The position numbers and the translations under genes are program-made. Positions 4,571 to 5,112 of a stretch of 64,000 bases of DNA are shown one piece after another. This stretch comes from Octopus sinensis (taxonomy: Eukaryota), in the NCBI RefSeq assembly GCF_006345805.1, contig NC_043020.1, positions 15,500,001-15,564,000 of the forward strand, given 5' to 3'. Within the stretch, counting starts at the first letter, position 1, and each line of letters begins with the position of its first letter. Below the pieces are notes generated by a model that was not told the origin of the DNA, searched no databases, and was given only the letters and a program-made list of their open reading frames with translations.

Positions 4571-5112
4571 TAGCCGGCCGAATGCTAGAAGAAGATCATC
4601 AACGATCAATCTACAAGGGAAATTCTCTAGAGGAAGAATTCAGCGAACACCAGAACCAAATTTGGCGGGCAGGACATATGAAAGTTTAAATAAAAAACAG
4701 ACTTAAATGCATACCTCGGTTTCGGTCTTTAACAAAAGAATTACTTGCATAATTCACTGCAGCCCTTCGCTTCAGGAAGTTCTTAGCGCGCCAGAACCAA
4801 GACATTTGAAATTTTATTCCCGATGTAATCAGTAAAACTAAGCACGTGTCTGTCTTGACACAGAGAGCTGGGGTTAGTTTTTCAGTTTGCATCTCGACGA
4901 CCGAATGTACTGATGAAGTCACGGACATTTGAATTATGCAAGTAATTCTTTTGTTAAAGACCGAAACCGAGGTATGCATTTAAGTCTGTTTTTTATTTAA
5001 ACTTTCATATGTCCTGCCCGCCAAATTTGGTTCTGGTGTTCGCTGAATTCTTCCTCTAGAGAATTTCCCTTGTAAATTGATCGTTGATGATCTTCTTCTA
5101 GCATTCGGCCGG

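What the first reader, a model, noticed from the sequence alone, without database searches (positions are those of the whole stretch)
4905..4979. Apparently intact hammerhead ribozyme in the sense strand of a serine-protease intron
Seen: both conserved cores (CTGATGA 4910-4916, GAAA 4963-4966), a GUA cleavage triplet (4972-4974), stem I atgta/tgcat, stem II gtc/gac extended by gaatta/taattc, and a tiny stem III CC-GA-GG. It lies at the edge of a 186-bp inverted repeat, in the intron between the Asp exon and the next exon, on the transcribed strand. Established: Penelope-like element termini carry minimal type I hammerheads that often cleave only as dimers. Inference: the protease pre-mRNA might be cut here, or the motif may be a silent relic.
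Basis: partly seen in the sequence, partly recalled or inferred. Interest (0 to 1): 0.78.

Follow-up and report, generated by a model that had tools for sequence, protein, structure and literature searches.

The report
Retroelement hammerhead ribozyme in octopus intron
A real-looking hammerhead ribozyme motif sits in an intron of an octopus protease gene, but it rides on a recently inserted mobile element and is locked in a long RNA hairpin, so it is most likely a silent passenger and not a switch that cuts the protease message.

Summary
The motif is real. All invariant hammerhead core positions, a 5-7 bp stem I, a long interrupted stem II and a 3-bp helix III lie at 4903-4981 (+). They sit in intron 3301-6369 of a trypsin-like protease gene of an Octopus close to O. 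vulgaris.

A match this good is expected 0.002-0.005 times per window. The window holds two firm and two weaker motifs of the same build. A covariance model trained on four of them (three from the window, one from O. vulgaris), without the candidate, finds it (27.9 bits, E about 5e-4). Rfam models miss the candidate and the one other member tested.

It is best read as a Penelope-like/retrozyme-type minimal type I hammerhead. It is carried by a 545-675 bp insertion in a (TA)n microsatellite that O. vulgaris lacks. The insertion is an inverted truncated copy plus a longer direct copy, so the repeat boundary falls inside stem II.

Two copies are predicted to form a double hammerhead through helix III (ACCGAGGU, tandem G.A). 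Here there is one sense copy, and its 3' half is locked in a 186-bp hairpin (-375 kcal/mol). Cutting of the pre-mRNA is therefore unlikely.

No other copy of this element could be retrieved, so Penelope membership and catalytic activity remain untested.

The parts
4903..4909 (+). Stem I, 5' strand (GAAUGUA); pairs with 4975-4981
   Evidence: Sequence. The descriptor scan reports a 7-bp stem I. It is present in the dimer MFE.
4910..4916 (+). Core box C3-A9 (CUGAUGA)
   Evidence: Aligned to the box of the model R1.
4917..4962 (+). Stem II region. Contains an extra A (4917), GUC/GAC (4918-4920/4959-4961), GACA/UGUU, GAAUUAU/GUAAUUC with loop GCAA, and C4962 next to G12.
   Evidence: Folds (-11.1 kcal/mol, z -2.6 against shuffles). 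The register at the base of the helix is ambiguous: an A.C mismatch, or G10.1-C11.1 with a bulged C.
4963..4966 (+). Core G12 A13 A14 and A15.1 (GAAA)
4966..4973 (+). Helix III, ACC-GA-GGU. Not a palindrome. The self-duplex has six Watson-Crick pairs around a tandem G.A.
   Evidence: Self-duplex -6.6 kcal/mol, against -7.0 for the palindromic ACAUAUGU of the neighbouring motifs. It forms between molecules in the dimer MFE.
4974..4975 (+). Predicted cleavage site, after A17 of GUA (between 4974 and 4975)
   Evidence: Position follows from the hammerhead consensus. Not tested experimentally.
4975..4981 (+). Stem I, 3' strand (UGCAUUU)
4571..4756 (-). Left arm: inverted copy of the last 186 nt of the element. 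It carries the reverse complement of the 3' half of the hammerhead and has no CUGANGA box on its own strand.
   Evidence: The minus-strand reading shows CTGAAGC, not a box.
4757..4929 (+). Spacer: the 5' part of the direct copy. It contains the stem I 5' strand, the box and the start of stem II.
4930..5115 (+). Right arm: the 3' part of the direct copy. It ends directly at (TA)n.
4441..4570 (.). 130 nt between the left (TA)n and the left arm. Also absent from O. vulgaris. Origin unexplained (a long 'tail', filler, or older sequence).
4320..4440 (.). (TA)n microsatellite on the left of the insertion
5116..5146 (.). (TA)n microsatellite directly after the right arm, followed by a SINE (5160-5360)
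3301..6369 (+). Host intron of the trypsin-like serine protease gene (GT at 3301, AG at 6368-6369)
   Evidence: The best protein hit, P0001, carries PF00089.
32593..32684 (+). Second hammerhead of the same build (CUGAAGA-A-GGCC..GGCC-C-GAAA-CAUAUG-UA), in a ~259-nt element (32454-32712) flanked by (TA)n on both sides
26173..26254 (-). Third hammerhead, 72% identical to the 32454 element. Stem I is GCGG/CCGC instead of GUGG/CCAC. It lies in a head-to-head palindrome (26135-26555).
42..131 (-). Weaker hammerhead-like motif (helix III ACGAUCGU). Its box lies in the 33-nt loop of the inverted repeat 8-105/139-236. It is also present in O. vulgaris.
21174..21234 (+). Weaker hammerhead-like motif. 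Its box lies in the 23-nt loop of the inverted repeat 21062-21168/21192-21298.
   Evidence: R1 scores it 18.1 bits, E 0.09.

Best explanation
The motif is the hammerhead ribozyme of a short retroelement of the Penelope-like / animal-retrozyme kind. That element inserted recently into a (TA)n microsatellite in this intron.

In a source element, inferred from what is known of this class, two such hammerheads in tandem repeats pair through their short helix III. They form a double hammerhead, and each cuts after GUA to process the element's RNA.

This genomic copy is a rearranged product that was non-functional from the moment of insertion. An inverted copy of the last 186 nt is joined to a longer direct copy of 359 nt. 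The repeat boundary therefore falls inside stem II.

In the protease pre-mRNA the single sense hammerhead has no dimer partner, and its 3' half is held in a 186-bp hairpin. It is expected not to cleave. The hairpin is the part most likely to matter, as double-stranded RNA.

Shown here: the motif, its statistical excess, the shared build with neighbouring motifs, the inverted repeat, the absence from O. vulgaris, and the predicted folds. Inferred: retroelement origin, the dimer mechanism, and silence in this context.
For: Core and stems:
- All invariant core nucleotides and three helices are present.

Chance expectation:
- Expected 0.002-0.005 per window. The reversed-sequence control gives 0, and a 22-kb Argonauta locus gives 0.
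- The window has 3 strict and 4 additional loose descriptor hits.

Independent model:
- Covariance model R1 was built from four other motifs only. It finds 4904-4980 at 27.9 bits, E 4.5e-4. This is the best full-motif hit outside the training set; one half-copy without a core box (106-202) scores higher.
- R1 finds nothing at E <= 1 in the Argonauta control.

Features not demanded by the descriptor that match the published class (Cervera & de la Pena 2014, PMC4209133):
- An extra nucleotide after A9.
- A long helix II and a short helix I.
- A tiny helix III, which is palindromic in the three independent neighbouring families.

Dimer prediction:
- The dimer MFE of 4895-4990 x2 is exactly the double hammerhead, -42.6 against 2 x -17.9 kcal/mol.
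- The helix III self-duplex is -6.6, comparable to the palindromic ones.

Insertion architecture:
- It matches Penelope-like insertions: an inverted 5'-truncated copy next to the direct copy, a hammerhead near the 3' end, and a (TA)n target (Craig et al. 2021, PMC8557442).
- Penelope-like elements are listed among recently active repeats of O. vulgaris (PMC13282606).

Age:
- The insertion is absent from the orthologous O. vulgaris intron.
- The arms differ at 1 of 186 positions, against about 2-3% substitutions between the two genomes.

Silence in context:
- The hairpin is -374.8 kcal/mol, z -31.8.
- With the left arm present, all 52 nt of 4930-4981 pair with it, and P(stem I) is about 1e-46.
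- Single minimal motifs did not cleave in vitro and dimers cleaved weakly (PMC4209133).
Against: - No second copy of this element was found in the window, in 36 kb of O. vulgaris, or in the metagenome and viral collections. That it is a repeat family is therefore not shown.
- No reverse transcriptase / GIY-YIG reading frame is nearby.
- Outside the core and stems the candidate shows no significant similarity to the neighbouring hammerhead elements.
- Helix III is not palindromic, and the base of stem II is not a clean G10.1-C11.1 pair.
- Rfam hammerhead models give no hit even at E <= 10. They also miss the clearer neighbour.
- The pair counts come from motifs chosen by a descriptor that demands pairing, so they are not independent evidence.
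- E-values from R1 are rough.
- The 130 nt at 4441-4570 are unexplained.
- Terminal inverted repeats flanked by TA also fit a DNA-transposon-derived MITE.
Confidence: 0.65

Rival explanations
1. The 545-bp unit is a DNA-transposon-derived foldback/MITE with 184-186-bp terminal inverted repeats and a TA target duplication. Under this reading the hammerhead-like motif in it is a chance match with no ribozyme history.
For: - The arms can be read as GCCGGCC...GGCCGGC flanked by TA on both sides.
- Tc1/mariner elements and MITEs are recently active in O. vulgaris (PMC13282606).
- The motif at 21180 sits in a 237-bp near-perfect palindrome that looks like a MITE, with CAGTG-type ends.
- No other copy and no reverse transcriptase were found.
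Against: - A chance match of this quality is expected 0.002-0.005 times per window. Real motifs of this build are at least 100 times denser here.
- The inverted repeat contributes none of the hammerhead stems.
- The motif lies on the strand, and at the position, expected for a direct copy whose 3' end is the outer end of the right arm.
- The dimer MFE is a double hammerhead.
- The left flank of the unit is not (TA)n and is also missing from O. vulgaris, so a simple TA-site insertion does not account for the whole difference between the genomes.
Confidence: 0.15
2. Hairpin by design. The element is a rod-like, retrozyme- or viroid-like unit in which the long hairpin and the hammerhead are alternative folds. 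The layout with the box in the loop and the 3' half in the arm would then be a built-in feature and not an insertion accident.
For: - The same layout recurs three times in the window, in elements that share no sequence. The box lies 13, 5 and 13 nt before the arm.
- Two of the units are 229-237 nt, within the published size range of animal retrozymes of about 170-400 nt (PMC7229834).
Against: - In transcription order the masking arm is made first, so the hammerhead could hardly ever fold.
- The opposite strand lacks the box.
- No tandem copies are present, which define animal retrozymes.
- The neighbouring 32454 element has the hammerhead without any inverted repeat.
Confidence: 0.12
3. It is a working intronic ribozyme that cuts the protease pre-mRNA and tunes its expression, like the conserved intronic hammerheads of amniotes.
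For: It is in the sense orientation inside the intron with an intact core.
Against: - It is absent from the orthologous intron of O. vulgaris.
- Helix III is too short for a monomer, and there is no partner on the same transcript.
- The 3' half is sequestered in a 186-bp hairpin.
- Minimal motifs of this class cleave poorly even as dimers (PMC4209133).
Confidence: 0.04
4. The inverted repeat is an assembly artefact (a fold-back chimera), and only a single copy of the element exists at this site.
For: The window is a scaffolded assembly with a 100-N gap at 19528. Penelope-like structures are known to trouble assemblies (PMC8557442).
Against: - The repeat is short, asymmetric (173-nt spacer) and carries one substitution between the arms.
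- Similar inverted structures at 8-236 are identical in an independent O. vulgaris assembly.
Confidence: 0.04

Closest known systems
Minimal hammerheads of metazoan Penelope-like elements (Cervera & de la Pena 2014, PMC4209133)
   Same: - Type I topology with a full catalytic core.
- Short helix I and enlarged helix II.
- An extra nucleotide after A9.
- A helix III of a few pairs that calls for a dimer.
- Mostly dispersed single motifs in truncated copies.
- Pairs of motif fragments on opposite strands 100-700 bp apart.
   Different: - Helix III here is not palindromic (CCGAGG). The dimer interface would contain a tandem G.A.
- CUGAUGA and GAAA are 46 nt apart, much further than in the published consensus.
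- The G10.1-C11.1 pair is possible only with a bulged C.
- No link to a Penelope reading frame could be shown.
Insertion architecture of Penelope-like elements, including the (TA)n-targeting Naiads and their 'HHR_half_core' cases (Craig et al. 2021, PMC8557442)
   Same: - An inverted 5'-truncated copy abutting a direct copy.
- Insertion in a (TA)n microsatellite.
- An extra stretch at one end only.
- Core halves 35-50 nt apart, as reported for some Naiads.
- Naiads are reported in Octopus.
   Different: - The one-sided extension is 130 nt, not 30-40.
- Naiads are described as lacking canonical hammerheads and as long inactive in cephalopods, whereas this insertion is young and its motif is complete.
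Animal non-LTR retrozymes (Cervera & de la Pena 2020, PMC7229834; Li et al. 2026 preprint, 10.64898/2026.07.22.740005)
   Same: - Short non-coding units of a few hundred nt of low G+C carrying a type I hammerhead.
- Proposed to be mobilised by Penelope-like elements.
- Dimer-dependent cleavage in some lineages.
   Different: - Retrozymes are defined by head-to-tail tandem copies. There are none here.
- The preprint reports vertebrate retrozymes as excluded from introns. This motif is intronic.
Double hammerheads of newt satellite 2 and avocado sunblotch viroid (as summarised in PMC4209133 and PMC7229834)
   Same: Helix III is too weak for a monomer. Two motifs share an extended helix III, which is the predicted MFE for two copies of this sequence.
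   Different: Those occur in tandem repeats or multimeric replication intermediates, which bring two copies together. Here a single copy sits in a host intron.
Conserved intronic hammerheads of amniotes (HH9, HH10; from memory, cited as De la Pena & Garcia-Robles 2010 in PMC4209133)
   Same: A sense-strand hammerhead inside an intron of a protein-coding gene.
   Different: Those are stable monomers with loop-loop contacts, are conserved at orthologous sites, and are recognised by Rfam models. This one is lineage-specific, minimal and not recognised by Rfam.

Membership tests
Hammerhead ribozyme (type I) | Invariant core C3 U4 G5 A6 N7 G8 A9 / G12 A13 A14 / A15.1-U16.1 / H17 | tested here: met
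   CUGAUGA at 4910-4916, GAAA at 4963-4966, U4973, A4974.
Hammerhead ribozyme (type I) | Three helices around the core, with helices II and III closed and helix I open | tested here: met
   Stem I is 7 bp and stem II is an interrupted 14-bp hairpin. Helix III is 3 bp with a 2-nt loop; as a monomer it folds as 2 bp plus a 4-nt loop.
Hammerhead ribozyme (type I) | Match to curated covariance models (Rfam hammerhead families) at or near the gathering score | tested here: not met
   No hammerhead hit at the gathering score on the window. None at E <= 10 on 451 nt or 96 nt. The same models also miss the clearer neighbour at 32593-32684, so this test is insensitive for the class.
Hammerhead ribozyme (type I) | Site-specific self-cleavage in Mg2+ | not testable with these tools
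   Needs in vitro transcription of monomer and dimer.
Minimal hammerheads of Penelope-like elements | Extra nucleotide between A9 and 10.1, with a G10.1-C11.1 pair | tested here: inconclusive
   A4917 follows A9. G4918 can pair with C4962 only if C4961 bulges. The alternative register is A.C followed by G-C, U-A, C-G. The same ambiguity exists in the motifs at 32599 and 26179.
Minimal hammerheads of Penelope-like elements | Palindromic 15.2-16.2 / loop 3, so that two motifs share an extended helix III | tested here: not met
   CCGAGG is not self-complementary. The function may be kept: the self-duplex with a tandem G.A is -6.6 kcal/mol and the dimer MFE is a double hammerhead.
Minimal hammerheads of Penelope-like elements | Belongs to a consensus family of many genomic copies with compensatory changes | not testable with these tools
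   No second copy in the window, L001, or the metagenome or viral collections. No octopus genome can be searched by DNA here. The pair counts across different families are biased by how the motifs were picked.
Penelope-like element | Reverse transcriptase plus GIY-YIG endonuclease reading frame flanked by pseudo-LTRs that carry the hammerhead | tested here: not met
   No long reading frame near the motif, and no open reading frame of RT/endonuclease length anywhere in the window (ORFs were not compared with domain libraries). This would fit a truncated or non-autonomous copy, but membership is not shown.
Penelope-like element | Insertion signature: 5' truncation, adjacent inverted truncated copy, microsatellite target, one-sided tail | tested here: inconclusive
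   An inverted 186-nt copy plus a 359-nt direct copy ends at (TA)n. The one-sided extra 130 nt (4441-4570) is longer than the published 30-40 bp. The same facts fit a MITE with TA duplications.
Animal non-LTR retrozyme | Head-to-tail tandem repeats of the hammerhead-bearing unit | tested here: not met
   Arms and spacer have no direct repeat in the window.
Conserved intronic hammerhead (regulatory) | Presence and conservation at the orthologous site in related species | tested here: not met
   Window 4441-5115 has no counterpart in the orthologous O. vulgaris intron, where (TA)n runs into the SINE.
MITE (Tc1/mariner-type) | Terminal inverted repeats flanked by a TA duplication; many copies of fixed length | tested here: inconclusive
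   Inverted repeats are present and TA lies at both ends. However, TA is trivial next to (TA)n, and copy number could not be tested.

The most novel reading that the evidence does not exclude
Octopus genomes may carry a so far undescribed class of hammerhead-bearing hairpin elements.
- The CUGANGA box sits in the loop, and the rest of the ribozyme lies in one arm of a long inverted repeat. This is seen three times here with unrelated sequences.
- The hairpin would act as a built-in mask of the ribozyme.
- Alternatively the layout marks a fixed stop or jump point of the reverse transcriptase at the ribozyme.
- In the candidate's family the dimer interface would use a tandem G.A instead of a palindrome.
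- In an animal with massive editing of double-stranded RNA, such masks could be opened or destroyed by editing. That would link ribozyme activity to ADAR.
Probability: 0.08. Interest if true: 0.6.

Novelty: new member of a known kind. Interest (0 to 1): 0.33.

Why it matters
- It shows that a hand-read hammerhead can be a true positive even when Rfam is silent. Octopus genomes appear to hold minimal hammerheads with stem II inserts of about 30-60 nt that the curated models miss.
- For the protease gene itself the finding is probably of little consequence. The insertion is young, species-specific and predicted to be catalytically silent.
- What it does add to the transcript is a 186-bp, nearly perfect RNA hairpin. 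Long, nearly perfect double-stranded RNA of this kind is associated with hyper-editing, which is exceptionally strong in octopus (PMC5625713).
- The recurrent layout, with the box in the loop and the 3' half in the arm, may carry information on how Penelope-like reverse transcription ends or jumps. That mechanism is still poorly understood (PMC11167929).

Tried and rejected
1. Rfam scans at gathering and at E <= 10 gave no hammerhead. This negative is uninformative, because the clearer neighbour at 32593-32684 is missed too.

2. My first impression was that the candidate's element is homologous to the 32454 and 26392 elements, through shared strings in the stem II insert and after the cleavage site. 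Local alignment against shuffles gives z of 0.4-2.5, so I reject it. The relation is one of motif build, not of sequence family.

3. The pair-covariation counts on six motifs look strong: 96.7% of cells paired, and 8 of 11 pairs changed on both sides. The motifs were selected by a descriptor that requires pairing, so I do not count this as independent evidence.

4. Attempts to find other copies of the candidate's family all failed:
- A protein search with the 97-aa antisense reading frame.
- An exact look-up of the 35-aa frame internal to the arm.
- Two metagenome scans and one viral scan with candidate-specific patterns.
- BLAST within the window and against L001.

5. I tried to sample more octopus DNA through homologues of the O. 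vulgaris LINE reverse transcriptase. The hits were mostly not from octopus. One Argonauta locus served only as a negative control.

6. Supplementary consensus libraries of Penelope-like elements or octopus repeats are not held as text.

7. A minus-strand hammerhead using the left arm is rejected. The upstream sequence reads CUGAAGC, so position 9 is wrong.
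Full report
**What is in the sequence.**
Window 4903-4981 on the + strand reads:
GAAUGUA-CUGAUGA-A-GUC...GAC-C-GAAA-CC-GA-GG-UA-UGCAUUU.
- All invariant hammerhead positions are present: C3-A9 at 4910-4916, G12-A14 and A15.1 at 4963-4966, U16.1 at 4973 and A17 at 4974.
- Stem I has 5 clean pairs (4905-4909/4975-4979). It extends to 7 pairs with an A-U and a second G.U.
- Stem II starts with GUC/GAC and continues through two internal loops into GACA/UGUU and GAAUUAU/GUAAUUC. 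This hairpin is -11.1 kcal/mol, z -2.6 against shuffles.
- Helix III is A-U, C-G, C-G around a 2-nt loop, which a monomer cannot close.
- The nucleotides flanking the core at the base of stem II are A4917 and C4962. This reads either as an A.C mismatch, or as the extra nucleotide after A9 described for Penelope-type hammerheads followed by G10.1-C11.1 with a bulged C.
- As an isolated 79-mer the hammerhead shape is -12.2 kcal/mol against an MFE of -14.1. The 75-mer is no more stable than shuffles (z -0.7).

**Context.**
- The 186-nt inverted repeat is real: 4571-4756 and 4930-5115, 99% complementary, with a 173-nt spacer. There is one mismatch (4611 C / 5075 A).
- The gene is a trypsin-like serine protease on the + strand. 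Its exons are at 2183-2305, 3168-3300 (the Asp exon), 6370-6515 and 8082-8234 (GDSGGP). The motif lies in intron 3301-6369, which has GT..AG ends.
- The best protein match is 'mast cell protease 1A [Octopus vulgaris]', 95% identical, PF00089.
- Its locus L001 (O. vulgaris OX597837.1) is collinear with the window, with about 2-3% substitutions in long unique blocks. The window therefore comes from a close relative of that reference.

**Is it more than chance?**
I wrote a descriptor of the candidate's own stringency:
- CUGANGA and GAAA up to 70 nt apart;
- stem II of at least 3 bp, with or without a mismatch next to the core;
- helix III of at least 2 bp beyond A15.1-U16.1;
- UH at the cleavage site, and stem I of at least 4 bp.

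Results of the descriptor:

| Sequence searched | Hits |
|---|---|
| 1500 dinucleotide shuffles of the window | 8 (5 with stem I >= 5; 3 with stem I >= 7) |
| Reversed window, reversed L001, reversed Argonauta locus | 0 |
| Argonauta locus, forward | 0 |
| Real window | 3 |
| Real window, looser version | 7 (0.11 expected) |

At genome scale, chance matches of this quality must exist, of the order of a hundred in a genome of a few Gb. In this region real motifs outnumber them by at least two orders of magnitude.

**The neighbours.**
- The two other strict hits are 32593-32684 (+) and 26173-26254 (-). They read CUGAAGA-A-GGCC...(about 50 nt)...GGCC-C-GAAA-CAUAUG-UA, with a perfectly palindromic helix III (ACAUAUGU).
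- They belong to one family of about 257-nt elements, 72% identical over 279 nt. Their stem I differs by a compensatory change, GUGG/CCAC against GCGG/CCGC.
- O. vulgaris carries a still cleaner one at L001 11969-12058 (-). It has a 9-bp stem I, a 7-bp stem II and helix III ACAAUUGU.
- Two weaker motifs lie at 42-131 (-), with helix III ACGAUCGU, and at 21174-21234 (+).
- All have 31-61 nt between the two core boxes.
- A covariance model built from four of these without the candidate (A4, R1) finds 4904-4980 at 27.9 bits, E 4.5e-4 in the window. It is the best full-motif hit outside the training set; a half-copy without a core box at 106-202 scores 31.2 bits. The model finds nothing at E <= 1 in the Argonauta control.
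- Rfam's hammerhead models give no hit for the candidate, even at E <= 10 on 96 nt. They equally miss the 32593 motif. The Rfam negative therefore says little about this long-stem-II class.
- Outside the core and stems the candidate shares no significant sequence with the other elements. It is a different family of the same build.
- The strong pair statistics are biased by the way the motifs were chosen. I do not rely on them.

**What carries it.**
- Window 4441-5115 has no counterpart in the orthologous O. vulgaris intron. There the (TA)n tract runs directly into the SINE that follows the candidate in the window. A different insertion, a 3.4-kb LINE with AP endonuclease and reverse transcriptase, occupies the same tract.
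- The arms differ at 1 of 186 positions, less than the divergence between the two genomes. The insertion is therefore young and lineage-specific.
- Its structure is: an inverted copy of the last 186 nt, then 173 nt, then the same 186 nt in direct orientation ending at (TA)n.
- This is the signature described for Penelope-like elements: 5'-truncated copies, often with an inverted 5'-truncated copy abutting them, a hammerhead near the 3' end, a microsatellite target and a one-sided extension (Craig et al. 2021, PMC8557442).
- A Penelope enzyme has been shown to cleave and extend both DNA strands (Frangieh et al. 2024, PMC11167929). That would give two cDNAs starting from the same 3' end. This link is my inference.
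- On this reading the repeat boundary at 4930 is simply where the shorter copy ends.
- Penelope-like elements are among the recently active repeats of O. vulgaris (PMC13282606).
- The motif also shows the published hallmarks of the minimal hammerheads of these elements, except that helix III is not palindromic (PMC4209133).

**How it would work, and why probably not here.**
- Two copies of 4895-4990 are predicted to fold, as their joint MFE, into a double hammerhead. Each keeps stems I and II, and the two helix III strands pair between molecules: A-U, C-G, C-G, G.A, A.G, G-C, G-C, U-A. The energy is -42.6 against 2 x -17.9 kcal/mol.
- The 8-nt self-duplex is -6.6 kcal/mol, comparable to the palindromic versions of the neighbours. 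The motif is therefore plausibly competent as a dimer, the mode proposed for this class.
- Published tests of this class found no cleavage for single motifs and weak cleavage for dimers.
- In the protease pre-mRNA there is one sense copy. The other + strand motifs (21174, 32593) lie outside the gene and have non-complementary helix III sequences.
- The left arm is transcribed first. Once it is present, all 52 nt of 4930-4981 pair with it, and the pairing probabilities of the hammerhead stems fall to 1e-19 to 1e-46. The whole unit folds into a hairpin of -374.8 kcal/mol, z -31.8.
- I therefore expect no self-cleavage of the pre-mRNA.
- The feature most likely to have an effect is the hairpin itself. 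Long, nearly perfect double-stranded RNA of this kind is associated with hyper-editing, which is exceptionally strong in octopus (PMC5625713).

**What remains open.**
- I could not retrieve a single further copy of the candidate's element. No reverse transcriptase is nearby. Both the retroelement origin and Penelope membership are therefore inferred, not shown.
- Inverted repeats flanked by TA next to (TA)n also fit a MITE with a chance motif. I rate this at about 0.15.
- The 130 nt at 4441-4570 are unexplained.
- One observation is unaccounted for. In three unrelated elements the CUGANGA box sits in the loop between the inverted-repeat arms, 13, 5 and 13 nt before the arm that holds the rest of the motif. 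These are the candidate, 21062-21298 and 8-236. This may mark a preferred stop or jump of the reverse transcriptase at the ribozyme. It may instead mark a class of hairpin elements in which hairpin and ribozyme are alternative folds.

**Verdict.**
The assignment to Penelope-type minimal hammerheads is supported at the level of build and context. The suggested cutting of the protease message is unlikely. This is a new member of a known kind and of modest interest. Two side points are worth a genome-wide look: Rfam-invisible long-stem-II hammerheads in octopus, and their recurrent hairpin layout.

Noticed in passing
window 32454-32712 (+) and 26135-26555 (-): Two copies of a ~257-nt hammerhead-bearing element, 72% identical, in opposite orientation 6 kb apart. 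The first is flanked by (TA)n on both sides. The second is a head-to-head palindrome centred on the element's 5' end (about 26395) and is truncated by (TA)n.
   Followed up: partly
window 8-236, 21062-21298 and 4571-5115: Three unrelated inverted-repeat units each have the CUGANGA box in the loop, 13, 5 and 13 nt before the arm that holds the rest of the hammerhead-like motif. Only one strand has the box in each.
   Followed up: partly
L001 11969-12058 (-), O. vulgaris: The cleanest hammerhead of the set: 9-bp stem I, 7-bp stem II with a normal A-U at 10.1/11.1, and helix III ACAAUUGU. It lies about 200 nt upstream of the protease His exon (L001 12253-12423) and is antisense to the gene. It is just outside the window.
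   Followed up: partly
L001 18000-21420 (-), O. vulgaris: A 3.4-kb LINE (AP endonuclease plus reverse transcriptase, with two long reading frames) sits in the same intronic (TA)n tract where the window has the hairpin element. Each insertion is absent from the other genome.
   Followed up: partly
window 5160-5360 and about 13 other places (for example 19965-20146, 23922-24103, 38999-39184, 61101-61287): An abundant SINE of about 190 nt (…TTTACTTGTTTCAGTCATTTGACTGCGGCCATGCTGGAGCACCGCC…). Copies are 69-96% identical (most 87-96%) to the one next to the candidate.
   Followed up: no
window 28220-31960: About 3.7 kb of short-period, low-complexity repeats lie between the two oppositely oriented hammerhead elements. 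Reading frames through them give poly-Ile/Thr, poly-Tyr and poly-Leu.
   Followed up: no
window about 58540-58660 (-): A first coding exon of a Ras-type small GTPase (…[22 protein letters not shown]…) at the end of the open frame 58535-59353.
   Followed up: no
window 19528-19627: A 100-N assembly gap inside a (TA)-rich stretch.
   Followed up: no
window 29315-29659 (-): An open frame with a Cys/His-rich end that resembles the C-terminus of non-LTR retrotransposon ORF2 proteins. This is judged from memory only.
   Followed up: no
window 4571-4756 / 4930-5115: In the sense pre-mRNA these arms form a 186-bp duplex with one C.A mismatch, a likely target for ADAR hyper-editing or small-RNA production. 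If the duplexed GAAA box were edited, the ribozyme core would also be destroyed.
   Followed up: no
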